From positions 62,001-126,000 of the forward strand of contig JAIVFI010000007.1 in NCBI GenBank assembly GCA_025558095.1: 64,000 bases of DNA, given 5' to 3'. Below, piece after piece: positions 2,500-25,241 of this stretch. A program made the position numbers and the translations under genes. The notes under the pieces were generated by a model that did no database searches, was not told the origin of the DNA, and worked only from the letters and a program-made list of their open reading frames with translations. The DNA is from Hyaloraphidium curvatum SAG 235-1 (lineage: Eukaryota > Fungi > Monoblepharomycota). How positions within the stretch are numbered: position 1 is the stretch's first letter; each line of letters starts with the position of its first letter.

Positions 2500-2810
2500 T
2501 CACGCGGACTGGAATGGACAAACAATGTCCATGGTGACGAAGGTGCCCCCCGCGCGCAGCACCGAGTACAATCCGACCAGCAGGGTCAGGAACGTGAGCA
2601 GGGTCCCCCTGATTGTCGACCCGGTGATCGGGAACCTGAAGAAGGTCGCGCGGTGCTCGTCGGCCTCGAGCCTTTTCGTGGGCTTCGAGCGCCGACAAAA
2701 CCGCAGCGCGGGCCGCAGGATCGAAAGAGGCGACGCCGATCCGTCGCGAAGCAGTTCGGATGCGGGCACGGGCGCGGTGCACGCTCGCCGAGAGCTCAGT
2801 GACCTCGCGG
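2500..2810 (-). pseudogene. 3' fragment of GRL/7TM family gene (copy of about 18284-18606) with frameshift
   Basis: Near-identical to the 3' end of the 17140-18606 gene (REVTELS..RARARIRTASRRIGVASFDP..ATFF..CPFQSA*). It lacks the 14 nt agctctccaccatg, which shifts the frame. No homology upstream of about 2810. Confidence 0.85.
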
Positions 2811-4022
2811 GATGAGTAATGCCGCTGTAGGTCACGCCCGTCTGGGCATTGCCGTCGTGTCGATCGCCCACACGGGCCCAGGCCCCCGCGATCCGTTCCC
2901 GGGACAAGAATTAAACGCCAGCATCGTCCACGGACTTGCCCGCCATATCCACGGTGCACGGCTGGGCGATCCGGCCCATCCGTAGAGAACTGCACGAAGG
3001 ATGCCGAGGCAGCACCGAGGGAGTCGAAGGCGAGAACAAGCAAAGGAGAAAAGCTCGCGTTGAAGATGAAGTTGGCGTTGTGCTTCCTAGTGCGAGCACC
3101 TGCTGGCCCAGGGGCGGTGAAGATGTAGTTCGCGTGGCTCTGGACCAGGGCCCACTGCTCTCTGGATAACAATCCGCAAAGCTCGCCCCGAGGCCCGGAT
3201 AACGGAACCGTCGTGCTTGGCTGGTCCTTTCGGTAGTATCCAGATGAGGCATGCTCCCTGGTGGTGACATGGAGGACCGTTTGCAGCCCTTGCGGCACCG
3301 CAAGGAGGAGAGGGGAATTGGGAGGCGCGCAGGAGTGGACGGCAAAGCTTCCAGCGCGCGAGAAGGAGGAAGGCGGGATTCAGAATGTGGTGGGCCACCA
3401 ACGAGGGCAGCGTCGTCAGGAAGGCCGCGATGGCGCCGTCCCGACCCTTCACAAGCCGTTTCCGGAGGTACCGAGGACGACATGCTGGGACAGCGATAGG
3501 CCTGGAGAACGTAGGGTAGCCGTGCCGGCGCCGTCTTCCGGGACCTTCTACTATTCGACCCGATCAGTAGAAGAGGGGACGCGTTGGTGAGTGCGAGGAT
3601 GGGAGGAAGTGCACTGGGGGAAGAATTCGGCGGTTTGCCGCGAAAGGCGTACGGTGCGGGCGCACGATCCTGCTGAAGTGCACGATGGCAAGTGAGGGGT
3701 GATGGCTTCGGGGCCGGTGGGAGCGCCAGGGGAAGGCGGAGGCCAAGGACGGGTCGGTCGAGTCATCCGTTGGCGGCGAGTCAGCTCAACTTGATGGTCG
3801 TACCGGCCGCGGGGCAAAACGCTCCGAGTGCGCCGGCAAGGCACTTTCTTGGTCGCACCGAGCGTTTCCGAGCACTCCCGTGCGGGATTCGTGTGTCCGC
3901 TGTGGCTTTCGTGCCTGGGTGATTCCGGGGGCTGAGCTCGGTCGGGACGGGGTCGGGGTGAGGTCGGGACGCTGCGCGACGTCACCGCCTCCCAACGACT
4001 CACAATCGCCAGACACTCAAAC

Positions 4023-5285
4023 ATGAAACACACACCATCCGGGACCATCCTCGCACTCGCGGCGCTGCCGCTGGTGGCGGCGCTGCTGCCGCGGGCCGCC
4101 GCGGACGCCTGCGGCGACGAGTGCCGCGCGTGGGCGAAAGACTGCCGCGCGGCGTGGGCGGCGTGGGACGGCGCCGGCTGCGGCACCGAGATCGAGGCGT
4201 GCTTGTGCGCGCCGTCCGTGCGGGGCTGCGCCTACGCTCTCGACAATGACCCGCGGGCCGTGGCCGCGCTCAAGAAGAACGGCATGGACTACCCCACCGT
4301 AGCCGCGGCGTTCGACGACTCCTGCAACTCGGCTCGCAAGGACAAGGCGGACATGGATTCGCCCGACGCCGCCCTCTGGTGCCCGCTTGTCGCGCTCGCC
4401 TTCGCCGAAGGCGTCAACTCCATCTTTGCCGCGCTCAAGTGCACCGTCCGGCTGACCGTGGGCCCCGCGGCGACGGCGACAGCCACAGCCACGGCCACGG
4501 CCACGCCGGCCCGGACCACCTCTCTCGCGACCCCCTCGACCACCGCAATCGGCCCCTCAGACACAACCGCCGTCACCACCACCGCTTCGACCCCCGACGC
4601 CTCCGCGACGCCTTCCCCCGATGCAGCCTCTCCGCCCACCCTCAGCCCCGGTGCCATCACCGGCATAGCTGTGGGCACTGCAGCCGGCGTTGCTGCCCTT
4701 GGCCTCGGCGTCGCCGTCGCAGTCAACCCCACGCACACGCTCACCTGGCACACCATCACGGCCGGCCCCGGGTCCGACATCGAGCCCGGGGTCAAGCCGG
4801 CACCGCCGCAAGGGCCCGCTAACCCCCAGCTTCCTCCCCCTGAGCAAGCTCCCCCGCCCCCTGACTACCCCGGCTCGGGTTCGACGCCGCAGCTTGGCGG
4901 CGACACTGTGCAGCCGGTGCCTCCCTCCCTGGGCAACGCAGCACCGGCTCCGTCACAGCAGCCCGGCGGCGATACGATGCAGCAGGCGCCCGCCCCCCTG
5001 GGGAACCCAGCCCCGGCTCCGTCGCAGCAGACCGCCCCCGCCCCGTCGCAGCAGGCCGGCGGCGAAGCGAGGCTGCCGCCCCCACCACCCCCGGCGCACA
5101 CGGCAGTGACCCCGTCGCAGCAGACCGCCCCTGCCCCGAACCAGCGGGCGGGGAGCGATGCGAAACCGCCGCCGAGGCGCCAGTCCCTGCAGCCTTCCGT
5201 CACGGTGGCCGAGATCATGGACATGATGGGCGCCGACCAGCCGAGCTTCCTGCGCTTCGAGCCCGGCCGGCCCCCGATGCCCTGA
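4023..5285 (+). CDS. Type I membrane protein: signal peptide, Cys-rich ectodomain, Ser/Thr stalk, TM, Pro/Gln-rich tail
   Basis: Leader MKHTPSGTILALAALPLVAALL, about 10 Cys, T/S-rich stalk, TM AITGIAVGTAAGVAALGLGVAVAV, tail with PPDY and APAPSQQ repeats. Confidence 0.7.
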   Translation: MKHTPSGTILALAALPLVAALLPRAAADACGDECRAWAKDCRAAWAAWDGAGCGTEIEACLCAPSVRGCAYALDNDPRAVAALKKNGMDYPTVAAAFDDSCNSARKDKADMDSPDAALWCPLVALAFAEGVNSIFAALKCTVRLTVGPAATATATATATATPARTTSLATPSTTAIGPSDTTAVTTTASTPDASATPSPDAASPPTLSPGAITGIAVGTAAGVAALGLGVAVAVNPTHTLTWHTITAGPGSDIEPGVKPAPPQGPANPQLPPPEQAPPPPDYPGSGSTPQLGGDTVQPVPPSLGNAAPAPSQQPGGDTMQQAPAPLGNPAPAPSQQTAPAPSQQAGGEARLPPPPPPAHTAVTPSQQTAPAPNQRAGSDAKPPPRRQSLQPSVTVAEIMDMMGADQPSFLRFEPGRPPMP

Positions 5286-5453
5286 AGGCGTGGAGCGCCG
5301 GCGAGGGTGCCGACCTCCGGATGTCGGCTGCCCGCTGCCCCGCACCGATCGGATCGGATGCGGCGGCATGTACATAGTTCAAGGGACCCTGCTTTGTACA
5401 AAGCCAATCCATTGTAGTGTGACATGCATGCACGTGAGCCCAATACAACCCTT

Positions 5454-7031
5454 TCAGGATCCGCCCGGGCACACGCTCTCGACAGTGACCCCGATCCCGG
5501 CCCCCCGGAGCACCGACCACAGGCCGACGCCGACGGTGAACGCCGTGACCGCGATCGTGCGCACTGCGCCGAAGGTGATGAGCACCCCGAAGAACCTCGT
5601 CTGGAACTTCTCGATCCCCGCGAGCCCGCCCAGCATCTCGGCGTGAAGGCGCACGGACTCCGCGGCGGCGGGGTCGCCGATAGCCCTGAACGCGAGGGCA
5701 CGGAGGTCGAGAGCGGCATTGGTGTACATCGTCGCGATGCGGGTGGCTTCGAGGTTGGAGGCGGCGACGGTGAAGAGCTCGAGAAATAGCATGCAGCACA
5801 TGATGCCGAAGGTGGCGAGGCGGCCGGCGTTGATGCATCCGGCTCCGAACTGTGTGGATTTCGGACGAGGGGGTTACCACGGGTCATTCACCAGAGGTGC
5901 GATCCAACCCACCATTCCGACGCAGATGGCCGAGGTTTCGGCAGCGACACCCATGACCGAGACCAACCGCGCGCCGACCCCGGCGTAGAACCGCCGCCGC
6001 CACGAAGCGGCGAGCACCGCATGGAGGACGACGTAGGGCTCCTGTTCGATGGTCACCGGGCCGGGCTTGTCCGCATGCTCCCGAGCCGCCGCAAGGTGTT
6101 CCATCCGCGTGATCAGGTCGTCCAGGCAGATGGCGACGGCCCGAACACGGAGGCGCAGCTCCAGCTGGAGCAGCGCGGGGTTGGAAACGGTCGCCCCGTA
6201 GTTCAGGGCGTTGAAGAAGAGGAAGAAGGTGAAGTAGGCGATGGAAACGGCCGTGAGGGTGGCCGACCACGTCGTGCCCCAGGTTTGCTCCCGGAAGGTG
6301 ACGATGCCGGTCCAATAGGTCAGGATGCCGGCGGTGAAGTTAAATGCGAGGAAGACGGTTAGGAACGTCAGGAGGGGTTGGACCGGCAACGACGCTCTGA
6401 TGCTGCCAGCGCAGGTGTCCCTGGGGCATGGGCACGTGTCCACGTCCTCGTCGTCATGGGCGAGCAGCCCAAAGGACGAAGCCGAGGACTTTCCAGGTTC
6501 CTGAGCGTGGTGCGCGGCGGTTCTGACCAGCTGCAGGTACCGGGCAACACCAGCAAATTGGGAGCTGTCCAGGAGCCGCTCGGCGTCCGCAATGAACTTG
6601 GGTGCCTCGCCCCCGACCCTGCCGCGGACAACAGGCACCGCCCAGAACGCATCCGAAACGACGACCTGCACCGTCGCCACAATTAGCTGCCGCGTGCCAA
6701 AACGCCCCCCGTTGAAGATCCACTGCAGCGCCAGTAGGAACCCCAGCGACGCGAAGCCGCCCAAAAGCCTTGCGCCCGCGGTTGCGGAGGAAAAGCGCCG
6801 CAGTCGGAGCTCGAGGCCGACGAAGGCGGCGAGGGCGGGGGACCACGAGAGCGCGGCGATCAGGGATCCCCGGGTGAGCGGGTGCGCGTCACGTGCGGCC
6901 GCCCCGCGGTCCTCGCTGGCGAGGAGGCGCAGCACCTGCGGCGCTTCCTTGGGCAGAGATGGTGGCGGGGCTGCGGGGAAGAGAGCGGCCCATTCGGCTG
7001 CCGTGAATGGCAGCGAAGACGTGAAGGCCAT
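5454..7031 (-). CDS. 7-TM GRL/7TMIC-like membrane protein, paralog A (2 exons; intron 5850-5912)
   Basis: The 385-aa and 115-aa ORFs are joined by a GTGGGT..CAG intron, giving AICVGM|FGAGCINAG. Family motifs FTAAEWAALFP, HDDEDVDTCPCPRDTCAG, TRFFGVLITFGAVRT, terminal CP. Confidence 0.8.
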
Positions 7032-7271
7032 TGGGAGCTCTTGTTTCTTCGACGTTGACCACGGCTTCGGTCGCCAGTCTAGGAGCTACGATGCCAACAA
7101 AATGTGGCCCGATAACTGACACGCCGCACTTGGCGGATTTTGCGGCAGCGCTGCAGGGTGGCCGGAAACAGGACTCCCGCCGCAAATCCCTTGTTGACGC
7201 ATTCGTCAACTCCGTCTTCCGTTTCCCACGCGTCTCTCGCTTGAACCGACAATTTAGCCCACCGCATCCCG

Positions 7272-7943
7272 ATGGGTCTCGCCGTGGAGGTCGGCCTGCT
7301 CGCGCACTTTGCCGGCGGAAGCGATCCGGAAGCCTTGGAACACTACCGCGGGCAGTTCGCCCGCCTCCGCGCCGCGGTCGAAGCTGCCGGCGTTTCCGGG
7401 TACTGCGAGCCCGAGTCGATTCCGCCGAAACCCTCGGGGAACAACCTTGGGCCTTCGGACCGGCTGTCCTCCTCGTTCCCGTACTCCTTCCTGCAATACC
7501 TCCGCCGCGCCTACGCGCTCCTTGTTTCGGAGCTCCCCGTGGTCCCGGCGACCGATCCCGCGGTGCTCAAGCACGATGCCGGTGTCGTCGACGACGCCGC
7601 CTCGATGCTCTCGTCGCACTTGCTCTGCCATTCGGACTGCGAAGGGTACTACGTCCCCGTGGACCTCCCCGACCCGCTCTTCCTGGTTCCGGACTCTGGC
7701 GTCGCGGGGGCCGGGATCGTCGGTTCTTCTCCCCGCTTGCTGCAGGAGCTGCGCGCGCTCGCGCCGTCGCTGGGGATCCGGCTCGGGGAGGGCGGGCAGC
7801 TACCCCCCGCCGAGGAGGACCGGGTTGCCATGCTGGCCGAGGACGACGCGGACCCGTGGCACAGGGAGCTGACGGCTTGGACGGCGCTGTTCCGCGCCGC
7901 GGGGGAGAGCGTGCGGACGGGCGCAGCCATCGTGTTCTGCTGA
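7272..7943 (+). CDS. Bacterial-like hypothetical protein (223 aa, intronless)
   Basis: Globular ORF with FPYSFLQYLRRAYA, SHLLCHSDCEGYYVPVD, VGSSPRLLQEL and C-terminal AIVFC, which I recall from a bacterial hypothetical family. Confidence 0.7.
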   Translation: MGLAVEVGLLAHFAGGSDPEALEHYRGQFARLRAAVEAAGVSGYCEPESIPPKPSGNNLGPSDRLSSSFPYSFLQYLRRAYALLVSELPVVPATDPAVLKHDAGVVDDAASMLSSHLLCHSDCEGYYVPVDLPDPLFLVPDSGVAGAGIVGSSPRLLQELRALAPSLGIRLGEGGQLPPAEEDRVAMLAEDDADPWHRELTAWTALFRAAGESVRTGAAIVFC

Positions 7944-7979
7944 ACCCGAATCCACGTAACGCGCATGGGAAAAAGCCGC

Positions 7980-9663
7980 TCATGCCGCGGCGGGTGCCGC
8001 CGGACTCGCATCCGCCGCCTGCCCCGTAGCCCCGTCCCCCTCCGACTCCCCATCCGTCCCCGCCTCTTCTTTTGCCTTGAGCGCCAGCATCTCGACCAAC
8101 CTGTCGCACATCCACGGCGCCGCGTCCGGATCGTGCGGCTTGGGCGGGTTCTGCTCCGGCGCGTCCACCCGGCCCCAGTACCGCTCGAACAGGAACGCCG
8201 CGGGGTCGAAGCCCCGCGGGGGCACGGGGGTGGTGCCGTCCGGGTTGGTCCCGAGGATGCGGGACCGAGCGGCGGCGGCGCCGGCGAAGCCGACGGCAAA
8301 GTCGCCGGACTGTCGGCCGCGCACCCGTCAGCCCCGCGACCCGGCCCGCACGACGAAAGAGGACCCACCTTCCACGCGTCCCCGTACTCGTACCCGTCGC
8401 CCCAATCCTCGGGCCGCTCCCCGTCCTCGGGCTCCTGCTTGGCCTGCCACTCGACGCACCCGATCTCCTCCGGGCTCGAGCGCAGGCGGACCTGCGGCAC
8501 CACCTGCGCCCGCCCCCACGCCGCGGGGTCCGACTCCAGGAGCGATTCGAGGGCGTCGCGTTCGTCGTGCGCGCCGGTGAGGCGGTAGGCGAGGAGCCGG
8601 GAGAGGAGGGAGAGGGAGGTGGGCGAGCGCCGGACGAGGAGGGCCGAGGGGGACAGGCCGTCGCAGTCCCTCGCAACAATGAAGTCCAGCTCCGGCTTCG
8701 CACCCTTGGTGTCGTTGAAGCGCGCGCCGTGGAGTTCCAGGGCGAGGTCGACGATCACGTCCAGGGGCGCCGAGGTGGTTGTGATGAGCGCGTCGGGGTC
8801 GAGCCAGAGCGCCCATGCCTCCCTTTCCGCATCGGGAGCGGCGTAACCCCGATCGTCCCCGACCTCCACCCCCTGGGCGGGCAGGTACGGCGGCCCCCAA
8901 GACACGTTCTCGGCCCCCGTCTCGCCCCACAGCGCCACCTCGAGCGCCGGGAAGCGGGACCACCCCGGCTCCCCCTTCAGCAGCGGGTCCAGGTGGATGT
9001 GCAGGGGGTACCCGTGCCGCCGGGCGTAGCGCTGCCGGTTGGCGAGCGAGAGGAGGTGCCAGGGTTTGGGGTCATTGACATCGGCGGCGGCGACGAGCGT
9101 GAATGCGCGGCGGGAACGGGGTTGCGCGGCGTCGGGGTCCCGGAGGACGGCGACGCCGACGGCCGGCATGCCCTGCACGCCGGGGACGGAGGCGGGCTCC
9201 CCGTGCGGCTCGGGGAGGTCCAGCACCGCGGGCCCGGCATGCCCCTCGGCGACCACCTCGAGCTTTCTGCGCCCCGAATCACAGAAGTCAGGCACAAGGG
9301 CGCGTTGAAGTCCGTTCAGGCGACCCACATCTTGCCGCCCTCCCCCTCGGCGATCCCCAGCGTGTACGCGTCCCCGCCCACCGCGTCCACCTCGGCCCTC
9401 CCGACGGCCTCCCCCGAATCCCGCCTCCGCACCTCCAGCTCCACCCTGCCCGCCGCAACGGGCGCGTACGCCGACACGGAGAAGAAGGCGAGGTCCGGGA
9501 GCACCGTTTGGCCGTCGGCGGAGATTGAGATGGGCGGGAGGGAGGGCGCGGCGTGCACGGCGCGGAGGCCGGCGAACCGCGGGGGTGAGGCGGCACACGT
9601 GGAGAAGAGGGAGAGGAGGACGAGGCACGAGGCGGCTAGGGCCGCGGCCTTTGGGCGGGGCAT
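7980..9663 (-). CDS. GT34 (GMA12/MNN10-like) glycosyltransferase; introns 9267-9328 and 8310-8368
   Basis: Signal/anchor MPRPKAAALAASCLVLLSLF; NRQRYARRHGY, WSRFPAL, WALWLDPDALI (DxD), FIVARDCDGL, WK|SGDFAVGFAG. Confidence 0.75.
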
Positions 9664-10048
9664 GTTTGGGCGGGAGGTCTGTTTGGGTCCGCGAGGTTGG
9701 CGGCGTGAGGGCAAGCGGACGACGTTGGACCTCCGCCCAAGCGGAAAAGGCAAGAGTAGCGATCAACGAACGACTTGGATGGATTCTCAATCAACAAGGA
9801 CGGCGTACCTTCATTGGGCGTGGTGGAGCCTTGCCCTCGCAGGACACCGGCACTCCATCCACCCAGGCGGCGTCCGAGGCCCCGGGTCTACAACGATCTA
9901 CTCGCCCGGATCAGATTTACTGTCATTGCTGGCTTCTTGCCGGCCTTCATTCTGATGCCAGCCGTCTAGGCCGAGCACTGACGCGCCGCATCGCCGCAGC
10001 ACTAGCCCGCGCCCCCGCTCCCCAGCGCCCGCAACCGCAGCGGACGCG

Positions 10049-10672: not shown

Positions 10673-11114
10673 ATGAGGGAACGCTGCGGAGGGGCTGTTT
10701 CCAGGTGTGGGCAGCATCGATGAGTCGGACTTGCTTGGGCTGACTTCAAGGAGGGGGCGCGGGGGCGGGGCGAGGACCAAGGCGGGCGACTAGCAGCGGA
10801 AACGGGGCTGGGCGGCAGGGAATGACATGGCGTACGTATGGACCTCAGATGATATACCTGACTCAAATTCGGATCCCTGCATGGACGCCGCCTATCCGCT
10901 CTCCCGCAAGATATCCATCGCCTGCCGGCCGCGCCCTGGGCGAGGGACATCCCGACGATGTCCGCCATCGACCTCGTTCCTCAAGTACGACCTGTGCGAC
11001 ATCGAGTCGACCCAAAAATGCGTCGATGCCGCCCTCGAAGAGCTCGGCGGTCTCGACGTCGGGTTTGCACAGCGGTGGATGAGCCAGGCAGACCGCGACC
11101 TCTTACCCCGCAGA

Positions 11115-12725
11115 ATGCACGCGACCGCCGCGGCTCAAGGCGCCGATTCACCCGCTATCGATGCTGCCTTAGTTGCTCTGGCGGTGCCGATGCCCGGCTC
11201 TTGGCCCGACGGGTTCCCCGGCGCCACCGACGGCCGCGCGCTGCTCTGCCTCCTCCCGGCGCCCGTGCCGCTCGAGCCGCCGATCGTGGACGACGAAAAG
11301 ACGCCGATCGTCGCGCCGCACGAGTCCGACATGGCCGCGGACGCGCGCGCAGCCGAGCCGCTGGTCCCGCGCGCGTTCGACGCCGCCCTCGCCGCGTTCC
11401 CCGTGCACCGCGCGCTGGCCAAGCTGCAGCGGCTCCCCAAAATCAACAGGATGCCGGTGACGCGTACGATCATGGTCGTCCCGGTGTTCGCTGCCATCGG
11501 AGGCACCGTCCGCCCGGCCCTCGCCTCGGGCCTCTTCGACGTGCGCGGCGTCGCTGTCGGAATCGCGGGGCAGCTGCTGCTCCAGATCGCATACCACGTA
11601 GCCGCCCTGTCGCAATCGATTCCCGCATGGCACAGGCCGGCGACCGAAGACGCGTCGCCGTTCGCGGGGCTGGCGCGGTGGAAGCTGCTCTGCGACCACG
11701 AGGCTGGCGGAGGACAGGGCGTCAAAGCCACCGAGCAGATGGGCCTCGTACGGTCCTCGCTGGGATCCGTTCTGGTGCTCCACGATCCAAATGACACGGC
11801 GTGCCCTTGCCCCGCACAGACCTGCGCCGGCGCGCTTCCGGCCCGCAGCGCCACATACCAGCTCCTCAACTTGTTTGTCTTCATTGTGGCGCGTGTCCTT
11901 GCCTACGGATTCTTTTTCCTCTTTACCGCGATGATCGCCCTCGCGGACACGACCTGGACGACGCCCTGGATGGCTCTGTTCTGCGTACTGCAGTTCGTCA
12001 CCGTCATCTTGACGGCTTTTTCGATCGGCCTGGAGGGTATCTATCCGGATCCGTCGCTTTTGGAGCTCGACGCGAGGCTCGAGGCGCGCGCGACGAAGCT
12101 GGTCCTTGCGGACGCGGTCAAGGCGGCGTTCTCCGACTCGACGGCGGACTACGGCGCCTCGCGCAGCGCTGGATCTCACCCAGCCGCGGACCGCGAACCG
12201 GTACCGGCCTACATCTCCCTGTTCCGCATGCTGGCTCCCAAATGGCGCGCCCGCGCCCTCGGCCGCGACGTCATTTTCCGCACCGTCGTTCTCGCCGTCT
12301 TCGGCGCCGACGGCGTCCTCCTCCTCATCTCCCTCCTGGGCGCCGGCTGCGCGACCGCCTACCTCCTCTGCTCGCTGCTCACGAACTTTCTGAACCTCGT
12401 GCTCGTCGTGGGAAGCTATGCGGCCGCCAACGTCGGGATCGACCGCATCGTGCACCTGTACCGCCAAGCGGGTACCGACCTCCGCCTCGGGTTCGCCGCC
12501 GTGCGGGTGCCGGTTCCGCCCAAGGCCGCGACGGACCTCCGCGCCATCTCGCGGCTGGAGCTCGCGGCGGGGGACAACTTGACGAAAATGTTCGGCATCA
12601 CGGTGACATTTGGGGTGGTCCGGGGGACTGTTGCAACGCTGGTTACGGTCGGCGTGGGCCTGTTTGGGATCCTGAGGGGCGCGGGGGCCAGGGCGACGGT
12701 GCAGAGCCTGTGCCCGATTGGATGA
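11115..12725 (+). CDS. 7-TM GRL/7TMIC-like membrane protein, paralog B
   Basis: Seven hydrophobic segments; LARWKLL, HDPNDTACPCPAQTCAG, WTTPW, LGAGC, AAAN, TKMFGITVTFGVVRG, terminal CPIG. Start uncertain (ORF open from 10827). Confidence 0.8.
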   Translation: MHATAAAQGADSPAIDAALVALAVPMPGSWPDGFPGATDGRALLCLLPAPVPLEPPIVDDEKTPIVAPHESDMAADARAAEPLVPRAFDAALAAFPVHRALAKLQRLPKINRMPVTRTIMVVPVFAAIGGTVRPALASGLFDVRGVAVGIAGQLLLQIAYHVAALSQSIPAWHRPATEDASPFAGLARWKLLCDHEAGGGQGVKATEQMGLVRSSLGSVLVLHDPNDTACPCPAQTCAGALPARSATYQLLNLFVFIVARVLAYGFFFLFTAMIALADTTWTTPWMALFCVLQFVTVILTAFSIGLEGIYPDPSLLELDARLEARATKLVLADAVKAAFSDSTADYGASRSAGSHPAADREPVPAYISLFRMLAPKWRARALGRDVIFRTVVLAVFGADGVLLLISLLGAGCATAYLLCSLLTNFLNLVLVVGSYAAANVGIDRIVHLYRQAGTDLRLGFAAVRVPVPPKAATDLRAISRLELAAGDNLTKMFGITVTFGVVRGTVATLVTVGVGLFGILRGAGARATVQSLCPIG

Positions 12726-15259: not shown

Positions 15260-15375
15260 CGCGGTGTTTGGGTGACTTGTCTGGGGACGAGCGACACCCG
15301 ATTGCTGCATATCGATCCGGATGCCTGTCAGGATTGAGATGCTATGCCACGTACAAGGTATAGAGCTGCCTTCCG

Positions 15376-16928
15376 TCAAGATCCAGGGCACACGCTCTCG
15401 ATGGTGACCCCGATCCCCGCCCCCCGGAGCACCGACCACAGGCCGACGCCGACGGTGAACGCCGTGACCGCGATCGTGCGCACTGCGCCGAACGTGATGA
15501 GCACCCCGAAGAACCTCGTCTGGAACTTCTCGATCCCCGCGAGCCCGCCCAGCATCTCGGCGTGGAGGCGCACGGGCTCTGCGGCGGCGGGGTCGCCGAT
15601 CGCCCTGAACGCGAGGGCTCGGAGGTCGAGAGCGGCATTGGTGTACATCGTCGCGATGCGGGTGGCTTCGAGGTTGGAGGCGGCGACGGTGAAGAGCTCG
15701 AGAAATAGCATGCAGCACATGATGCCGAAGGTCGCGAGGTGGCCGGCGTTGATGCATCCGGCTCCGAACTAAGCGGCATACAGGCAGCACATCATCGCCA
15801 GTCGTTTGCTAGAGAAGCGACCCAACCCACCATTCCGACGCAGATGGCGGCTGTCTCCGCAGCGACCCCCATGACCGTGACAAAGCGCGCCCCGGCCCCG
15901 GCATAGAACCGCTGCCGCCAGGAAGCGGCGAGCGCCGCGTGGAATGCGACGTAGGGCTCTTGCTCTATGGCCACCGGGCCGGCCTTGTTCGCGTCGCGAA
16001 CCGCCACGAGATCCTTCATGCGCCTGACCAGGTCGTCCAGGCAGATGGAGACGGCCCGCACGCGGAGGCGCAGCTCCAGCTGGAGCAACGCTGGGTTGGG
16101 CACGGTCGCGCCGTAGCCCAGCGCGTTGAAGAAGATGAAGAAGCTCAGGTAGGCGATGGAAACGGCCGTGAGCGCGGCCGACCAGGGCGTCCCCCATGTT
16201 TGGTTCCCGAAAGTGACGATGCCGGTCCAATAGTTCAGGATGTAGTTGGTGAAGTTGAACACGAGAACAAAGGCCAGAAACGTCACGAGGGGTTGGACCG
16301 GCAAGGATGCTCGGATGCTGCCCGCACAAGTTTCCCTCGGGCACGGGCATAGATCGCCTGCTTCATCATCATGATCAAGCAATCTCGGCGAAGAATCTCC
16401 ATGTTCTAAAGCGGGCTGTGCGGCGGATTCTGCGAGCTGCAGGTATCGGGCGAGGCCGGCAAGTTGGAAGCCGTCCAGAAGACGTTCCGCGCTGGAGAGG
16501 AACTTGGGCGCCTCGACCCCGAGCCGGCCTCGGAAAATCGGGACCGCCCACAGAATGAAGGCAGCCATGGCCTGCACAGTTGCCACGACCAGCTGCCGCG
16601 TGCCGAAACGCCTTTCGTTGAAGATCCACGGCAGGGCCGTGAGGAAGGCCAGGGGGAAGAACGCGCCGACGAAGCGCGCGCCCGAGGTCGAAGAGGAAAA
16701 TCGCCGCAGCCGCAATTCGAGGCCGACATAGGCGGCGAGGGCCGGCGACCACGAAAGCGAGTCGATCAAACTCCCCTGGGTGAGCGGGTGCGCGTTGCGC
16801 GCGGCCGCCCCGTGGTCCTCCTCCGCAAGAAGGCGCAGCACTTGAGGAGCATCCTTTGGCAAAGATGGCGGTGGCGACATAGGGAAGAGAGCGGCCCATT
16901 CGGCTGCCGTGAACGGCAGCGAAGTCAT
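15376..16928 (-). CDS. 7-TM GRL/7TMIC-like membrane protein, paralog C (close duplicate of A; intron 15769-15830)
   Basis: Colinear with 5454-7031, same intron position; motif HDDEAGDLCPCPRETCAG. Confidence 0.8.
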
Positions 16929-17139
16929 TGACGCGACTTGTTTCCAACGCCGACCACCCCTTCAATTTCAGTCCCACGGCGCCGAATCACCTCCAGCACG
17001 TGGCCAAGTACTTGATAGAGTCAGGCTTCAGCGAGTTTTCGTTTATCGTGCCAGGCACAACCAGGAGCCCTTTAGTGGGTGGGGGCGGCGGCGAGGGAAC
17101 GGCGGGTTTCGCAGTCCCTTGGCCACCTTCTATCGAAAC

Positions 17140-18606
17140 ATGCAGGACGCGGGCGCGAAGGATCTGCTCGGGTTCACGCCCGCCGAGTACGCTGCGCTCT
17201 TTCCGCACAGCGGGCCGGCGCTGGGGGCCGCGGCGGACCCCGACCCGCCGACGTACGCGACCTTCGATGCGGGCCCGCTGCCGCCGCTGCTCCGTGCCGG
17301 AGCGCGTCGGGTGCTATGGTTCAAGACGCATGTGCCTCGCGGCTATATTCTGGGGACCTACGCGGCGTGGTGTGCATCAATGGCCGCCTTGTTGGCCCCT
17401 GCGTGGGCGTTCGGGCGCGAGAGGTTCGGGCTGCGACAGCTTGCGGTGACGACGGTCTTCCGTGGCGGTACTCTCCTTTTGTTCCCGGTGCAGTACCGAC
17501 TAATGATTCCCGGGAGCTGGGGCTGGCAACCGGCTGCACACCCCAGTGACCCCGTCGACCTTGGCGGGATGTCGCTCATCGTGCGGTATCGCCAGCTCGC
17601 GACCTCGGAGGACGGCGGCGGGTCCGTGCTCCTGCGACACATTCCGGGCGACGCAAACTGTCCGTGCTTCCTGCCTGGCTGCGCCGCCCCGCTCGCTGGG
17701 AACCGTGCAGACGCAGCCGCTGCCATCCGTTTCGCGCTCCATTTAGTCAACATTGCCGTGGAGTGGTGCTTCGGCATGTCGTTCACCGCCTTCTACAATT
17801 TGCCCGCAAATTGGACGCAGTGGTGGAGCATCCTGCTCTCCGCGACTTTCCTGGCAACATCTTTTGCATTAAGTTTCAACAACATCTTCCAGGATGCCCT
17901 CTTTGGGACGTCCGTCGCGACGCTGACGCTGCAGCGCCGCCTGCACGTACGTGCGCTGGACATACTGCTGGACCGCACTGTGGAAGGCTGCGAGCGGAGC
18001 GCGGATCAGGTCTGCCGCGCTGCGGCCGGATCCGATCCCGCATCCCAGGTTCCCATAGGCGACGACTACGCCGAGCTCTTTTCCCGCTACGCCATGGGCT
18101 GGAAATATGACACGGCAGCCGCTGACGCCTCCATGCGCTGGCTCTCCTTCACCGCGGTCTCAGAGGCCGTCGTCGGTCTTGCCAACCTAGCCGCCGGCTC
18201 GTGCGTCACCTTCAACACCCTTGCGACCCTCTTCCTCCTTGTTGACGTCTTCTCGCACCTCGTCATGGTCGCCATCGCCAACCGTGAGGTCACTGAGCTC
18301 TCTTGGGGCGTCCGCCGCGCCCGCGCCCGCATCCGAACCGCCTCTCGACGGATCGGCGTCGCCTCTTTCGATCCTGCGGCCCGTGCTGCGGTTTTGTCGG
18401 CGCTCGAAGGCCACGAAAAGGAGCTCTCCACCATGCTCGAGGCCGACGAGCACCGCGCGACCTTCTTCGGCTTCCCGATCACGGGGGCCACCGTCAGGGG
18501 GACCCTGCTCACGTTCCTGACCCTGCTGGTCGGGCTGTACTCGGTGCTGCGCGCGGGAGGGACCTTCGTCACCATGGACATCGTCTGCCCCTTCCAGTCC
18601 GCTTAA
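17140..18606 (+). CDS. 7-TM GRL/7TMIC-like membrane protein, paralog D (488 aa)
   Basis: FTPAEYAALFP, RFGLRQL (cf. RFGTRQL in A/C), HIPGDANCPCFLPGCAA, NWTQWW, AAGSC, AIAN, ATFFGFPITGATVRG, terminal CPF. Divergent from paralog C. Confidence 0.8.
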   Translation: MQDAGAKDLLGFTPAEYAALFPHSGPALGAAADPDPPTYATFDAGPLPPLLRAGARRVLWFKTHVPRGYILGTYAAWCASMAALLAPAWAFGRERFGLRQLAVTTVFRGGTLLLFPVQYRLMIPGSWGWQPAAHPSDPVDLGGMSLIVRYRQLATSEDGGGSVLLRHIPGDANCPCFLPGCAAPLAGNRADAAAAIRFALHLVNIAVEWCFGMSFTAFYNLPANWTQWWSILLSATFLATSFALSFNNIFQDALFGTSVATLTLQRRLHVRALDILLDRTVEGCERSADQVCRAAAGSDPASQVPIGDDYAELFSRYAMGWKYDTAAADASMRWLSFTAVSEAVVGLANLAAGSCVTFNTLATLFLLVDVFSHLVMVAIANREVTELSWGVRRARARIRTASRRIGVASFDPAARAAVLSALEGHEKELSTMLEADEHRATFFGFPITGATVRGTLLTFLTLLVGLYSVLRAGGTFVTMDIVCPFQSA

Positions 18607-18947
18607 TCGGCCTGGGGTGGGAGGGTCGCCTGGGCAAGGCGGTGTTGGTGTGGTGGATGTCCCTCGAGTACATTCTGGTGTAGTCAACGCCGAGAAGACA
18701 GACAGCTATCTAGCTATGCATGGTATCTACCGTGTCGGAATCCGACCCCTTTGGATGCTCGAGGGCCACGCGTATGTTTCGCGGTCGTGGCGGCTTTTGC
18801 GTAGCCTGTACAATCGCGATTTATTGCCTGCGGCGAGGCCTTTTTCCTTCGCTAGCTAAAGATCTAGATCTACCTTCCCCCTCCGCCTATAAACAGCCCT
18901 CCGGTCGTCGTGCGTATGATACAGTGCGGGCTCTCCATTCCCCGGGC

Positions 18948-21710: not shown

Positions 21711-22275
21711 TGAGGTCGCAGAGGGCGGGAGGGCCAGCGGGCGACGAGGGGGACCGTTTGCTCGCTAACCTGTCAGTCTTGGGGCGGCACGTGAAATTGA
21801 TGCTTTCTCCGTGGTCCCCCCTTCTCCCCCAAATCCCTGTCCACAGGACGATCGGGCGACTATCCGAGGAATCGAGAGCTCAAGACACGATTGTGATGGG
21901 TCAGTCAAGAGCCTGCTGGCTCTTTCCCGGTGTCCCAGATCTCCCTCAGGCGGGCACTCAACTGTGGCAACTCAGGGTCCCTGGACGGCATCCTCGAAAA
22001 TGCAGCAAAAACATAAATGCCATTCCATCGGGGACCTTCTTTACATAAACGACGTCGCGGAAGCTGTCGAGCTGGCGCGGCGAATGTTGGGGGAGAGCGG
22101 CGAACAATGTCTCCAGCGCCCGAAGTCCCTCATAACGCCAACTCGAGCTGACAAGCGATGCGTCCCTACGCGCCAGCTACCGTCATGAACTGGACCTCCT
22201 AAAAGCCTGCGATCGATTTTCGGGCCGCCGCTGCCGACTTCGGGGGCCACACCGCCCTGACTGTCCCGTCCAACG

Positions 22276-23625
22276 ATGGGCCTCCGCGGGTTCCTCTCCG
22301 GCCTCCCGACGAAGCGCGAGGCGATCCGGCGCTTCACTCCGTCTTGGTTCACGGTCGTCATGGGCACCGGCTCGCTGGCGCTGAACATCGCCGGCTTCCC
22401 GTGGTCCTTTGGCGCCGCGCAGCGCGGCATCGCCCTTGCCTTCTGGTGCCTTGGTTGCCTCCTCTTCCTCACCTTCGTGACCATGGGCATCGCCCGCGCC
22501 ATAATGTTCACGGACGTGCTCGGGCTCATGATCCGACATCCGGCGCAGTCCTTGTTCCTCGGCTGCATCCCCATGGCATTTTCCACGCTCTGCAACGGGA
22601 TCCTGGCCATCCTCATGCCGTACCTCGCGGACCCTGAGCCGGCGGCGCGCACCGCGCTGGCCCTGTACTGGACCAACCTTCCCGTCGTGGTGTTTGCCAT
22701 CCTGCTCGTGCCCTGGTTCATGTTCACCGAACACGCGCACGCCATCGAAAAGGCCACCGCCATCTGGCTGCTCCCCGTGGTCCCCGCCTGCGTCGCCGCG
22801 GGTTCCGCCGGCGCGCTGCTGTCCAACCGCACCGCGTTCCCGTACCTCTCCCCCGCCGAGATCGAGGGCCTCCTGCTCTCGGGCTACACCCTCGGTGGGG
22901 CTGGCCTGCTGCTGGCCTACTCCATCATCACGATGTACACGCAGCGGCTGCTGGTGCACAAGCTACCCCCCGCCGACCAGGTCGTCTCGGCTTTCATCCC
23001 AACGGGACCGCTGACGATGATCGCGTGGGCGCTCCTCCGCCTCGGCGAGGGCGCGCAGATGGCCCTTCGCTCGGGGGAGCTGCAGGCTGCCACGGGGGAC
23101 ACCGAGATCGCCGCTGCCTGGGCCTCCTTCCTCGCCGCCGCCCACGGCACCGGCCCCGTGCTGGGGCTGCTCCTGTGGGGCTTTGGGACGTGGTGGTGGA
23201 TCGTCGCGCTCGCGACCGTGGGTAGTACCCTGCGCACGCTGCCGTTTTCCATCGGGTGGTGGGGATCTATCTTCCCCACGGGGGTGCTTGCGACCGCCAC
23301 CGCGAGCTACGGCGCCCACTTCGGTTCCGTTGCGTTCAAGGGCATGGCGGCGGCATTCATCGTCGCCCAGGCGCTGCTCTGGGGAACCACGGCCTTCTGG
23401 ACGTTGAGGGGGGCGTGGGTGGGGACCATGTTCGTCGCGCCCTGCCTGACGGAGCCGACGGCCGCCGGGGCCGCGGCAGGGGTGCCGACGGCGGGCGATA
23501 TCGACAAGCCCGGGGAAAGAAAGGGGGCACCGGAGAGTGCGGATTCGTTCAGTTCGACGGATTCGCAGAACGGCGAATCGGGAGCCTTGACGCCGCCGGC
23601 TGATTTAGTCGGCAATGGAGTGTAA
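22276..23625 (+). CDS. TDT/SLAC1 family transporter (malate/sulfite efflux, Mae1/Ssu1-like)
   Basis: FTPSWFTVVMGTG, HPAQSLFLGCIPM, WLLPVVP, LLVHKLP, FSIGWWGSIFPTG; about 10 TM segments. Confidence 0.9.
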   Translation: MGLRGFLSGLPTKREAIRRFTPSWFTVVMGTGSLALNIAGFPWSFGAAQRGIALAFWCLGCLLFLTFVTMGIARAIMFTDVLGLMIRHPAQSLFLGCIPMAFSTLCNGILAILMPYLADPEPAARTALALYWTNLPVVVFAILLVPWFMFTEHAHAIEKATAIWLLPVVPACVAAGSAGALLSNRTAFPYLSPAEIEGLLLSGYTLGGAGLLLAYSIITMYTQRLLVHKLPPADQVVSAFIPTGPLTMIAWALLRLGEGAQMALRSGELQAATGDTEIAAAWASFLAAAHGTGPVLGLLLWGFGTWWWIVALATVGSTLRTLPFSIGWWGSIFPTGVLATATASYGAHFGSVAFKGMAAAFIVAQALLWGTTAFWTLRGAWVGTMFVAPCLTEPTAAGAAAGVPTAGDIDKPGERKGAPESADSFSSTDSQNGESGALTPPADLVGNGV

Positions 23626-23747
23626 AGAGCGCGTAGATGCGGAGAGCGATCGCGCAAGTCAGACGGCGAGGCGGTCTCGGTCCAACCGCCGCGTGACGTG
23701 ACCGACGTGACCGTTCCATCAGCCCGCGCGCCCACCCGGGACCCACC

Positions 23748-25241
23748 ATGGCTTCCGAGATTCAGGACCGCACATCCGGCGAGACCTCGAAACCGAGCTC
23801 GATTATCCGCTTCGCGGACGCCGAGTGGCTCGCGCTGCTCCCCGTCGCGCCTCCCCCGCCGCCGTTGGACGCGGAAGCCGGCAACGTCGCGGACCCGGCG
23901 GCGGCCCCGCGGGCAGCGGCCCCGCTCGACATCGCGGACACGTACGCCGCGTGCCGCGCGGCCAATCGCCCCTTGCTCGCGCTAATGCTGCGCACGTACT
24001 CCGCCACGTCGTGGCCGGGGAGCATGCGGGTCACTACAGGCCTCGCGGCGCTCCTCGCTGTTCCCGGGAGCGCTGCCGCGATCGTGCTCGCCGGGCCCGC
24101 GGCCTCCTTTCCTGCTCGCAATCTTGCCCTCGGAACCGTCGCCGCTTTAGCCGTGCTGTTCCACAGGCCCCTTGCTCTGTATGTTGCCTGGCCGGCTCTT
24201 CTTCCGACCAGACCACCAACACGCGCCGATGTCGTTTCTTCGATGGCAATCAACGTCTGGATCCGTTGGGATGGGCTGCGCGCCGTACCCGGCTCGCCCC
24301 TTACTGCCCACAGGAAGGAGGACGCAATGGTATCGCTATGCCCCTGTCAGAGCTGCGCCGGCGACGTTGAGCGTGCCGATGTCCTCGAGCGATACCTGCA
24401 ATTCGTGTCGTTCACAGTGCTTGTCTTTCTTGTTCAGCTGTTTCTCATGTGGACCCCAGCCGTGACTTTTGCCACGCCTTTTTGGACCTCTGGATGGGCA
24501 GCCACCTACGCCGTTGGCCTCGTTTCGCCCTGTCTTTTCGCTCTTCAGTTGCTCGACCGCATCTCCACCCTCTACACCTTGCCGCAGGTCCGCCACCAGG
24601 CCAAATTAGCACGGCGGGCGACCGTCCTTTCTCTTTCGAACCTGCTGGATCGTTACCGCCTCGCTGTTGACACCGGCTGCGTACCGGATACCGTCCGCTC
24701 GTCGGAAGAAACCTACATCCGCCTCGGCCGCGCTCTCTGCGGGACCTGGTCGGCTTCAGGCCGGTTCTTCCCTTCCCTTCTCAAAGCCATCTTTGCGGCA
24801 CAAGGTGCCACCATGGTGCTTGTGTTCCTGCTCAACGGTATCGCGGGCTGCATGACGGCATGGCAACTCGCGTCCCTCGCGCACTACGTGTCGTACGTCG
24901 GGTTGTCCCTGCTGCCTCTGGCCGCGCACAACGAGAGCATCGGCATGGTCACGGACCTCTACGTGCACGCGCAGGGCAAGCTGCGGTCCCTCGCGCTGGA
25001 CGCCTCGTCGCGGGCGCCCGCCCTGTCCGCGGAACTAGCCCTGCACGACAGGGTGCTGGGGAACCTTCTGGACGAGAGCAGGCTTTTCCGGGCCAAGTTC
25101 CTGGGTTTCGGGGTGGATTTCGGGATGATGAGGACGCTCGCGGCCACGTGCGTCACGCTCGGCGTAGCGCTTTGGGGGATTCTCAGGGGCGTCGGCTTGA
25201 GGGCGACTTTGGAGACCTTTTGCCCCGTCGTCGCAGATTGA
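23748..25241 (+). CDS. 7-TM GRL/7TMIC-like membrane protein, paralog E (497 aa)
   Basis: FADAEWLALLP, HRKEDAMVSLCPCQSCAG, FWTSGW, IAGC, AAHN, AKFLGFGVDFGMMRT, terminal FCP. Confidence 0.8.
   Translation: MASEIQDRTSGETSKPSSIIRFADAEWLALLPVAPPPPPLDAEAGNVADPAAAPRAAAPLDIADTYAACRAANRPLLALMLRTYSATSWPGSMRVTTGLAALLAVPGSAAAIVLAGPAASFPARNLALGTVAALAVLFHRPLALYVAWPALLPTRPPTRADVVSSMAINVWIRWDGLRAVPGSPLTAHRKEDAMVSLCPCQSCAGDVERADVLERYLQFVSFTVLVFLVQLFLMWTPAVTFATPFWTSGWAATYAVGLVSPCLFALQLLDRISTLYTLPQVRHQAKLARRATVLSLSNLLDRYRLAVDTGCVPDTVRSSEETYIRLGRALCGTWSASGRFFPSLLKAIFAAQGATMVLVFLLNGIAGCMTAWQLASLAHYVSYVGLSLLPLAAHNESIGMVTDLYVHAQGKLRSLALDASSRAPALSAELALHDRVLGNLLDESRLFRAKFLGFGVDFGMMRTLAATCVTLGVALWGILRGVGLRATLETFCPVVAD

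What the first reader, a model, noticed from the sequence alone, without database searches (positions are those of the whole stretch)
2500..25241. Cluster of insect gustatory-receptor-like (7TMIC/GRL) channel paralogs in a fungal-type genome
Seen: five intact genes (5454-7031, 11115-12725, 15376-16928, 17140-18606, 23748-25241; about 490-540 aa) plus one pseudogene fragment. They have no signal peptide, about seven hydrophobic segments, a long loop between TM4 and TM5, AxxN after TM6, and a terminal segment x-F/M-F/L-G-F/V/I-x-I/V-T/D-x-G/A-x-x-R-T/G followed by a hydrophobic helix (e.g. AKFLGFGVDFGMMRTLAATCVTLGVALWGIL). Established: this is the layout of the TM7a/TM7b end of insect GR/OR ligand-gated channels and of plant DUF3537, and GRL homologs are known from some chytrids and protists. 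Inference: a lineage-expanded family of tetrameric chemosensory ion channels evolving by birth and death, possibly a fungal chemoreceptor repertoire.
Basis: partly seen in the sequence, partly recalled or inferred. Interest (0 to 1): 0.9.

Follow-up and report, generated by a model that had tools for sequence, protein, structure and literature searches.

The report
Huge insect-chemoreceptor-like channel family in fungus
The window holds five members, plus one broken fragment, of a family of about 400-470 genes in the aquatic fungus Hyaloraphidium curvatum; their seven-pass membrane proteins are predicted to fold and assemble like insect smell and taste receptor channels, a fold so far reported in fungi only as single genes.

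Summary
Five intact paralogs (A-E) and one 3' pseudogene fragment lie at the stated coordinates; only the introns of A and C needed correcting.

- **Topology:** N-terminus inside and C-terminus outside, with long inside loops and short outside loops.
- **Architecture:** long TM4-6 helices and a split TM7a/TM7b.
- **Conservation:** TM7b is the most conserved helix.
- **Assembly:** a four-copy model scores 0.68 against 0.00 for controls, with contacts through TM7a and the TM6 extension.

All this fits the published structural criteria for the 7TMIC superfamily. No sequence-profile method links the family to 7tm_7, 7tm_6 or DUF3537.

A family-specific DNA motif occurs 267 times in the genome against once in the control, and 20 of 20 sampled hits were true members, which gives about 400-470 copies. 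dN/dS is about 0.25. Relatives occur in one other fungus-like genome and in metagenome contigs.

Channel and chemosensory function, and expression, are untested. Another agent of this scan reached the same reading on other DNA of this genome (s1-704288).

The parts
5913..7031 (-). Paralog A, exon 1 (N-terminus to end of TM5)
   Evidence: Family profile positions 7-361, E 1e-78. The open frame ends at the donor GTGGGT.
5850..5912 (-). Paralog A intron (63 nt, GT..AG, phase 0)
   Evidence: Read directly from the sequence. Six of 8 two-piece genes sampled elsewhere in the genome have an intron at the same position.
5454..5849 (-). Paralog A, exon 2 (invariant EL3 Cys, TM6, TM7a, TM7b, stop)
   Evidence: Profile positions 362-491, E 1.5e-40. 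96-97% identical to exon 2 of C.
11115..12725 (+). Paralog B, single exon, 536 aa (alternative ATG at 11079)
   Evidence: Profile positions 11-491, E 6.6e-132; translation.
15831..16928 (-). Paralog C, exon 1
   Evidence: Profile positions 11-362, E 2.9e-76. dN/dS against A is 0.25.
15769..15830 (-). Paralog C intron (62 nt, GT..AG, phase 0)
   Evidence: Read directly from the sequence. It is not skipped in the contigs of run X1.
15376..15768 (-). Paralog C, exon 2
   Evidence: Profile positions 362-491, E 1.2e-40.
16929..17139 (.). 211-bp shared 5' intergenic region of the head-to-head pair C/D
   Evidence: Coordinates of the two ATGs. No contig of run X1 lies on 17010-17237.
17140..18606 (+). 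Paralog D, single exon, 488 aa
   Evidence: Profile positions 11-491, E 1.9e-114. AF2 model pLDDT 89.5. OR/GR are the only full-length structural matches. Its sister copy L004 on contig 10 is 76% identical at the protein level, dN/dS 0.26.
23748..25241 (+). Paralog E, single exon, 497 aa (the copy modelled first)
   Evidence: Profile positions 5-491, E 1.3e-125. AF2 pLDDT 89.8, pTM 0.89. Structural matches.
24309..24356 (+). Family signature H-x(5-10)-C-P-C-x(2-4)-C in the TM2-TM3 loop of E (H188, C198, C200, C203)
   Evidence: Invariant in 56 paralogs and in 4 proteins of other organisms. Translation checked. The DNA motif occurs 267 times against 1 in the control.
25017..25085 (+). TM7a of E (residues 424-446), predicted inter-subunit anchor helix
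   Evidence: Helix 424-446 in the model. It makes the confident contacts in the four-copy model.
25119..25190 (+). TM7b of E (residues 458-481), the most conserved helix and putative pore lining
   Evidence: Column entropy is 1.55 bits against 2.7-2.9 for TM1-6. R462 and T470 are invariant.
2490..2810 (-). Pseudogene fragment: an inverted copy of the 3' end of D with a 14-nt deletion and no upstream part
   Evidence: Profile positions 438-491 only. DNA alignment 88% identical overall. Inverted repeat arms 87-91% complementary.

Best explanation
The five genes are members of a very large family of seven-pass membrane proteins in Hyaloraphidium curvatum, about 400-470 copies. The family is specific to this fungus and its near relatives and forms a highly diverged branch of the 7TMIC superfamily, the fold of insect odorant and gustatory receptors, animal GRLs and plant DUF3537.

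Shown in silico:
- The N-terminus and three long loops face the cytosol.
- TM4-TM6 extend far below the membrane.
- TM7 is split into a cytosolic TM7a and a membrane TM7b.
- Four copies are predicted to associate through TM7a packed against the TM6 and TM5 extensions of the neighbour, as in the OR/Orco anchor domain.

Inferred:
- TM7b, the most conserved helix, lines a central cation pore.
- The highly variable TM1-TM6 bundle forms a ligand pocket in each subunit, so the repertoire senses many different small molecules by ligand-gated ion flux.
- Family-specific additions are a putatively cytosolic His-Cys3 motif in the TM2-TM3 loop (a possible zinc site) and an invariant outside cysteine pair (the TM5-TM6 loop and the C-terminal tail) that probably staples the tail to the outer mouth.

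The repertoire turns over by duplication, gene conversion and pseudogenisation.
For: **Fold.**
- AF2 without templates gives pLDDT 89.8 and pTM 0.89 for E, and 89.5 and 0.90 for D.
- Foldseek against the PDB: the top 11 hits are all insect OR/GR, best E 0.009, TM-scores 0.40/0.47.
- The exhaustive search of 48,161 chains gives the same result for E and for D.
- ESM Atlas models of unnamed cnidarian and echinoderm clusters match at TM 0.54-0.56 (by query) and 0.62-0.68 (by target).
- From my own knowledge, AF2's training structures predate April 2018, and the first OR-type structure, Orco 6C70, was released on 2018-08-22. The fold is therefore not recalled from training.

**Topology.** There are 33 Lys/Arg in the N-terminus plus the three inside loops (301 aa), against 1.3 in the outside loops plus tail (37 aa).

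**Architecture.** The helices are 322-366, 371-419, 424-446 and 458-481.

**Conservation.** TM7b has the lowest entropy.

**Tetramer.** ipSAE is 0.68 (runs 0.68, 0.72, 0.68) against a best control of 0.00. The runs agree in at least 83% of contacts and the partner pLDDT is at least 64. The mark was reached by 21 of 30 solved homo-pairs and 0 of 23 single chains. The interface is 424-446 against 403-421 and 315-324.

**Family size.** At least 84 loci were scored out of 748 candidates. A profile search found 475 cluster representatives at 50% identity. The DNA motif occurs 267 times against 1 in the control, 20 of 20 sampled hits were verified, and the motif's sensitivity is 57-66%.

**Selection.** dN/dS is 0.25-0.26.

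**Sequence-only lead.** DUF3537 and 7tm_7 clusters are among the nearest language-model neighbours.
Against: - No sequence-profile link to any known 7TMIC family. Pfam on 56 members finds nothing, a PDB profile search finds nothing, and PF08395 and PF12056 find nothing in the genome.
- The GR motif in TM7 (TYhhhhhQF) is absent.
- The Foldseek TM-scores against solved chains, 0.40-0.47, are below 0.5.
- The tetramer score comes from a model that may have seen OR tetramers, and four copies lie outside the tool's calibration.
- Expression is not shown. The only run found is of uncertain kind, and its contig runs through the intron of C.
- No functional data exist. H. curvatum has no flagellate stage (my own knowledge), so chemotaxis is not an obvious use.
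Confidence: 0.55

Rival explanations
1. The proteins have the 7TMIC fold and oligomerise, but they are not an environmental chemoreceptor repertoire. They could be constitutive or internally regulated channels, organelle-membrane proteins, or a self/non-self or pathogen-recognition system whose diversity is driven by conflict rather than by odour space.
For: All the fold evidence applies equally. The invariant, putatively cytosolic His-Cys3 motif points to internal regulation by metal or redox. The tree is star-like with long terminal branches (median 0.67), and copy number is very high, as in immune-type families. Published work stresses that the roles of non-insect 7TMICs are unknown (PMC9998090, concluding remarks).
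Against: The pattern of a variable TM1-6 bundle with a conserved TM7b is the one seen in insect ORs. dN/dS of 0.25 shows ordinary purifying selection in the pairs tested. No signalling or death domain is attached.
Confidence: 0.25
2. This is a convergent helical membrane bundle. It is an orphan fungal family that only resembles OR/GR channels in its arrangement of helices, with no common ancestry and possibly a different mechanism.
Against: Every full-length match (290-351 residues) among 48,161 chains is an OR/GR, for two paralogs that are 21% identical. Topology, loop asymmetry, the split TM7, the long TM4-6 helices and the interface position all agree. A sequence-only language model independently places DUF3537 and 7tm_7 clusters among the nearest neighbours. 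Benton et al. 2020 report only one of the four TM7 motif positions conserved in the accepted fungal GRLs (PMC7746228).
Confidence: 0.12
3. It is a G-protein-coupled or other classical 7-TM receptor family, such as fungal PTH11-like or cAMP-receptor-like proteins, or a transporter.
For: Seven hydrophobic segments, and large family size as for PTH11-like genes in other fungi (my own knowledge).
Against: No GPCR or transporter is among the top 50 of either exhaustive structure search. Foldseek rows for LAT and CLC transporters have TM-scores of 0.06-0.15. The topology is N-in/C-out, opposite to GPCRs. There is no Pfam GPCR or transporter hit.
Confidence: 0.03
4. It is a selfish multicopy element or an annotation artefact of a GC-rich genome, that is, long ORFs arising by chance.
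For: The genome is 62-73% GC and full of long spurious ORFs. Copies lie on nearly every contig.
Against: dN/dS is 0.25 with dS of 0.6. Ten residues are invariant across proteins that are 21-30% identical. A conserved intron position has canonical splice sites. Repeats end at the gene borders and show no transposon features. The fold predictions are confident.
Confidence: 0.02

Closest known systems
Insect odorant and gustatory receptors and Orco (7TMIC class A; PDB 8V00, 8V3C, 7LIC, 8VC2, 8JM9, 6C70)
   Different: Sequence identity is 6-14% and there is no HMM match to 7tm_6 or 7tm_7. The TYhhhhhQF motif is absent. The N-terminus has about 60 extra residues with a conserved F-x3-E-W-x-A-L-x-P motif. 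The TM2-TM3 loop is 63-71 aa and carries an invariant His-Cys3 motif. An invariant cysteine pair links the TM5-TM6 loop and the C-terminal tail. The conserved intron lies in the TM5-TM6 loop, not before TM7. The host is a fungus without neurons.
Fungal GRLs SpunGRL1 and SpalGRL1 of Spizellomyces (Benton et al. 2020, PMC7746228), and the 7TMICs of Chytridiomycota and Blastocladiomycota in Himmel et al. 2023 (bioRxiv 10.1101/2023.08.30.555482)
   Same: Chytrid-lineage fungi, the same predicted superfamily fold and topology, and weak or no conservation of the TM7 motif.
   Different: Those are reported as single genes per genome, whereas this family has about 400-470 copies. Neither paper mentions Hyaloraphidium. 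I could not compare the sequences directly, because no tool gave me those proteins.
Plant DUF3537 (PF12056) and PHTF-like class-B 7TMICs
   Same: Non-animal 7TMICs. DUF3537 clusters are among the nearest language-model neighbours. Class-B proteins are characterised by an enlarged TM2-TM3 loop, and this family's loop is also enlarged.
   Different: There is no HMM match to PF12056. The loop here is only about 65 aa, and its His-Cys3 motif does not come up in the papers I read. Plant families have 4-12 members (PMC7746228). Assignment to class A or class B was not tested.

Membership tests
7TMIC superfamily (structural criteria of Benton & Himmel 2023, PMC9998090) | Seven predicted transmembrane helices | tested here: met
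   Alignment-averaged hydropathy gives 7 segments. The AF2 helices match them.
7TMIC superfamily | Intracellular N-terminus (opposite to GPCRs) | tested here: met
   Positive-inside rule: 33 K/R on the N-terminal/IL side against 1.3 on the EL/C-tail side, averaged over 56 sequences. The anchor-domain helices lie on the same side. No DeepTMHMM run and no experiment.
7TMIC superfamily | Intracellular loops longer than extracellular loops | tested here: met
   IL1-3 average 71, 77 and 64 aa, against 6, 13 and 4 aa for EL1-3.
7TMIC superfamily | Long TM4-6 projecting into an anchor domain, and TM7 split into TM7a and TM7b | tested here: met
   In E the helices are 250-274 plus 278-309, 322-366, 371-419, 424-446 (TM7a) and 458-481 (TM7b). 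D has the same pattern.
7TMIC superfamily | Shared sequence profile with established members (the PSI-BLAST/HMM linkage of Himmel et al. 2023) | tested here: not met
   No Pfam, PDB-profile or genome HMM link. Only language-model leads to DUF3537 and 7tm_7, at scores of 0.85-0.92. Iterated PSI-BLAST and HHpred were not available.
7TMIC superfamily | Tetramer held by the anchor domain, with TM7b at the axis | tested here: inconclusive
   Four copies of residues 252-497 score 0.68 against 0.00 for controls, and the interface is TM7a against the TM6 and TM5 extensions. No confident TM7b contacts were listed. It is an in silico result and may draw on the model's memory of solved OR tetramers.
7TMIC superfamily | Ligand-gated cation conductance | not testable with these tools
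   Needs electrophysiology.
Insect/animal GR-GRL family proper (Pfam 7tm_7, PF08395) | HMM match, and the TM7 motif TYhhhhhQF | tested here: not met
   No hit at E <= 10 in 56 members or in the genome. The TM7b consensus R-x4-T-x2-T-x3-G-L-x3-L-R-G lacks the motif.
Animal GRL genes | Characteristic last intron just before the TM7-coding exon | tested here: not met
   B, D and E have no intron. A, C and 6 of 8 sampled genes have a phase-0 intron in the TM5-TM6 loop, at profile position 361/362.
GPCRs | N-terminus outside and the GPCR helix packing | tested here: not met
   Opposite topology. No GPCR among the structural matches.

The most novel reading that the evidence does not exclude
A fungus independently expanded the ancient OR/GR-type channel fold into a repertoire of about 450 ligand-gated sensory channels, as large as in insects. 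These channels carry a new cytosolic His-Cys3 metal or redox module. That would make Hyaloraphidium the first non-animal organism with a large ionotropic 'olfactory' system, and a tractable unicellular model for how such repertoires arise.
Probability: 0.35. Interest if true: 0.9.

Novelty: new variant of a known kind. Interest (0 to 1): 0.8.

Why it matters
The 7TMIC fold underlies insect smell and taste. Outside animals its function is unknown, and the numbers reported in the papers I read are small: single genes in two Spizellomyces fungi, six in two protists, and 4-12 in plants.

A fungal genome that devotes roughly one gene per 70-80 kb to this fold would show that massive diversification of these channels is not special to animals or to nervous systems. 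It would provide hundreds of natural sequence variants with a conserved pore helix for structure-function work. It would also give a unicellular system in which the ancestral role of the superfamily can be tested directly.

The invariant His-Cys3 loop and the extracellular cysteine pair are concrete features that can be mutated and that I did not find described for other 7TMICs. The family is also a candidate explanation for how a non-motile planktonic fungus senses its surroundings.

Tried and rejected
- **Word-indexed protein searches.** Three searches (paralog E, the 56-row alignment, P0089) returned almost nothing but the query. The Ala/Gly-rich composition probably swamps the index, so these blanks say nothing about distribution.
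- **Metagenome scans.** With a nine-sequence subfamily alignment, 99 pattern hits were found but none was confirmed.
- **Locating P0001.** The look-up of encoding contigs found no record of it, as expected for the window's own genome.
- **Pfam on neighbouring ORFs.** It gave only SLAC1, Glyco_transf_34 and a weak F-box, with no functional link to the family.
- **Pfam families 7tm_7 and DUF3537 against the genome.** The first look found no candidates. The tool's 14 control genomes also gave no hits, so the test is weak.
- **RNA evidence.** One run of uncertain kind was found. Its contigs match C, D and A exactly, leave the C/D intergenic region uncovered and differ in depth (22, 37, 79, 144), which looks like RNA. 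But the contig runs through the intron of C and no splice joint was seen. Expression and splicing are therefore not shown.
- **Rejected readings.** GPCR, transporter, transposon and chance-ORF readings were considered and rejected (see rival explanations).
- The spliced products of A and C were never joined. Each exon was searched, aligned and used for dN/dS and the tree by reference on its own.


Full report
**What is in the window.** The window is contig 7, bases 62001-126000, of a 31.9-Mb genome in 55 contigs with 62-73% GC. I built a profile from 56 intact paralogs of the same genome and ran it against the six-frame translation of the whole window. It finds exactly five genes and one fragment, and nothing in 26000-64000.
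- B (11115-12725, +), D (17140-18606, +) and E (23748-25241, +) are single exons. They are only 25-33% identical to each other.
- A and C each have two exons. The sequence shows a phase-0 GTGGGT...AG intron of 63 nt (5850-5912) in A and of 62 nt (15769-15830) in C.
- With these introns, exon 1 covers profile positions 7-361 and exon 2 covers 362-491 without a gap. The spacing from the conserved Trp to the invariant Cys is then 34 residues, the same as in E.
Each exon was handled by reference.
- The fragment at 2490-2810 (-) is an inverted copy of the 3' end of D. It is 87-91% identical, carries a 14-nt deletion and has nothing upstream.

**Organism and family size.** A profile search of 1.84 billion cluster representatives found 475 proteins at E <= 0.001 and 301 at E <= 1e-30. 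Of 20 hits that I looked up, 16 are 'hypothetical protein [Hyaloraphidium curvatum]' from GenBank. The genome is therefore this monoblepharid, chytrid-lineage fungus.
- A six-frame search of the genome scored 84 of its 748 first-look candidates, and these gave 87 matches at E <= 0.01, most of them full-length and on nearly every contig.
- To count without that cap, I used the family signature D-x2-C-P-C-x(2-4)-C-x-G as a DNA pattern. It has 267 matches, against 1 for the reversed control.
- Twenty matches not seen before were fetched, and all twenty are family genes covering the whole profile.
- The motif is present in 37 of 56 and in 72 of 126 independent full-length members. That puts the family at roughly 400-470 genes and pseudogenes, in line with the 475 cluster representatives.
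- Another agent of this scan reported about 450 copies from other DNA of this genome (s1-704288). My count is independent of that note.
- That note's word 'intronless' does not hold in general. A, C and 6 of 8 two-piece genes in my sample share a 51-65-nt phase-0 GT-AG intron at profile position 361/362, and other members are in three or four pieces.

**Fold.** Sequence methods find nothing. Pfam is blank on the five window proteins and on 56 members. A profile search of PDB sequences is blank. PF08395 and PF12056 find nothing in the genome.
- AlphaFold2, run with the 56-paralog alignment and no templates, gives a confident model of E (pLDDT 89.8, pTM 0.89). With a 60-row alignment it gives a confident model of D (89.5, 0.90).
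- Foldseek against the PDB puts insect receptors in the first 11 places: AgamOR28, Gr43a, BmGr9, Gr64a and AaegOR10. E-values are weak (0.009-0.16) and TM-scores are at most 0.40/0.47.
- An exhaustive alignment to 48,161 representative chains, which does not depend on Foldseek, puts the eight OR/GR representatives in ranks 1-8 for E.
- No GPCR or transporter appears in either list.
- Among ESM Atlas models, the best matches are unnamed cnidarian and echinoderm clusters, at TM 0.54-0.56 by query and 0.62-0.68 by target. These phyla have GRLs, but I did not verify that these clusters are GRLs.
- A sequence-only language-model search places DUF3537, 7tm_7 and Trehalose_recp clusters among the nearest neighbours of E and B. 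The scores are 0.83-0.92, so these are leads only.
- From my own knowledge, AlphaFold2 was trained on structures released before 30 April 2018. Orco 6C70 was released on 2018-08-22 (date shown). The fold was therefore not copied from a solved relative.

**Published 7TMIC criteria.** Benton & Himmel 2023 (PMC9998090, read) require the following:
- Seven TMs.
- An intracellular N-terminus.
- Intracellular loops longer than extracellular loops.
- Long TM4-6 forming an anchor domain.
- TM7 split into TM7a and TM7b.

All are met here.
- There are seven hydrophobic segments.
- There are 33 Lys/Arg per protein in the N-terminus and loops IL1-3 (301 aa), against 1.3 in EL1-3 plus the tail (37 aa).
- The helices are 322-366, 371-419, 424-446 and 458-481.
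- TM7b is by far the most conserved helix, at 1.55 bits of column entropy against 2.7-2.9 for TM1-6. This is the pattern described for ORs and for 7TMICs in general (bioRxiv 10.1101/2023.08.30.555482, section read).

The sequence-profile criterion used by Himmel et al. is not met with the tools I had, and the GR motif in TM7 is absent.

**Assembly.** Four copies of residues 252-497 of E were modelled together.
- The score is 0.68 (three runs: 0.68, 0.72, 0.68), against a best control of 0.00.
- The runs agree in at least 83% of contacts, and the partner pLDDT is at least 64.
- The mark was reached by 21 of 30 proteins solved as homo-pairs and by 0 of 23 solved as single chains.
- The tool warns that four copies are outside its calibration, and that a pass may reflect the model's memory of solved complexes.
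- The confident contacts are residues 424-446 (TM7a) of one copy against 403-421 (the cytosolic extension of TM6) and 315-324 of the neighbour. One copy touches two others. This is where the OR/Orco anchor domain holds the tetramer together.
- No confident TM7b contacts were listed, so a pore is inferred, not modelled.

**Family-specific features.** Ten residues other than the start Met are invariant in the 56 paralogs: H188, C198, C200, C203, R290, C368, N395, R462, T470 and C492, in E numbering.
- All but R462 stay invariant when four proteins from other organisms are added. R462 drops to 'nearly invariant'.
- By the topology above, H188 and the three cysteines (H-x5-10-C-P-C-x2-4-C) sit in the cytosolic TM2-TM3 loop. 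I read them as a possible zinc or redox site. This is inference and was not tested.
- C368 (the 4-residue TM5-TM6 loop) and C492 (the C-terminal tail) are both outside. The model pairs short strands at 368-370 and 485-487, so a disulfide is likely. This too is inference.
- A conserved N-terminal motif, F-x3-E-W-x-A-L-x-P, is modelled with high confidence. Its role is unknown.

**Evolution.** dN/dS is 0.25 for A against C in exon 1 (dS 0.64) and 0.26 for D against its sister on contig 10. The genes are therefore under purifying selection.
- Exon 2 of A and C has a dS of only 0.12 and is 96% identical at the nucleotide level, which points to gene conversion of the pore-encoding exon.
- In a maximum-likelihood tree of 62 rows (A and C as exon 1 only), the five window genes fall into four deep clades: A+C, D+L004, B and E. 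The cluster is therefore not a recent tandem array.
- The metagenome protein P0100 is sister to A+C, with SH-aLRT support of 99.
- P0056, P0063 and P0089 come from Logan contigs of run SRR26194948. That genome has 54% GC, a fungal TRPY1/YVC1 neighbour gene, and a PALP enzyme 74% identical to its H. curvatum counterpart. P0100 and P0151 come from JGI metagenomes.
- The family therefore predates H. curvatum, but it was not seen beyond such relatives. The tail of the hit list could not be inspected.
- Elsewhere in the genome there are tandem runs and inverted twins.

**Expression.** One public run, whose kind the tool only guesses to be RNA, holds contigs identical to C exon 1 and to D, plus the A version of the last exon. 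It leaves the C/D intergenic region uncovered, and the contigs differ in depth. But the contig crosses the intron of C unspliced and no joint was reported. Expression and splicing remain open.

**Literature.** Benton et al. 2020 list single GRLs in two Spizellomyces species, six each in Thecamonas and Vitrella, and 4-12 DUF3537 genes in plants. Himmel et al. 2023 mention fungi only as Chytridiomycota and Blastocladiomycota. No paper in the library combines Hyaloraphidium with these terms.

**Verdict.** The finding is a new, very large and sequence-diverged variant of a known superfamily. Function as ligand-gated chemosensory channels is the most likely mechanism but is inferred only.

Noticed in passing
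window 22276-23625 (+): An intact SLAC1/TehA-type anion channel gene (PF03595, E 8.5e-73) ends 122 nt upstream of paralog E. This is another ion channel next to the family member, probably by coincidence.
   Followed up: partly
window 7652-9790 (-) and 13259-15790 (-): Between the paralogs lie a long ORF with a GMA12/MNN10-type galactosyltransferase domain (PF05637, E 6e-11) and an 844-aa ORF with a weak F-box (E 9e-4). The ORF at 7272-7943, which another note calls bacterial-type, has no Pfam hit at E <= 0.001.
   Followed up: partly
window 4872-5126: Tandem repeats of about 69 nt, rich in Pro and Gln codons, lie inside the 420-aa ORF 4023-5285 next to paralog A.
   Followed up: no
G000 C1:703982-732069; C5:783987-816968; C12:691318-732417; C10:808992/813168; C14:39168/40905: Elsewhere in the genome the family forms tandem runs of 4-5 genes, an inverted pair with an identical motif sequence 4 kb apart, and a head-to-head pair like C/D.
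   Followed up: partly
L066-L068, L074, L081, L084 (G000 contigs 1, 2, 4, 5): A conserved phase-0 GT-AG intron of 51-65 nt at profile position 361/362 is shared with A and C. Other members are split at about positions 120 and 255. The family therefore has intron-bearing and intronless branches.
   Followed up: partly
L085 and L086 (Logan contigs of run SRR26194948): A second, unnamed eukaryote (GC 54%, with fungal-type TRPY1/YVC1, hamartin and PP2C neighbour genes) carries at least three members of the family that are 37-41% identical to the nearest H. curvatum copies. Its identity is unknown.
   Followed up: partly
window 17010-17276: In run X1 no contig covers the C/D intergenic region. The contig for D begins at 17276 with sequencing-adapter letters, 136 nt downstream of the ATG that the conserved N-terminal motif requires. 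The 5' end of D's transcript is unclear.
   Followed up: no
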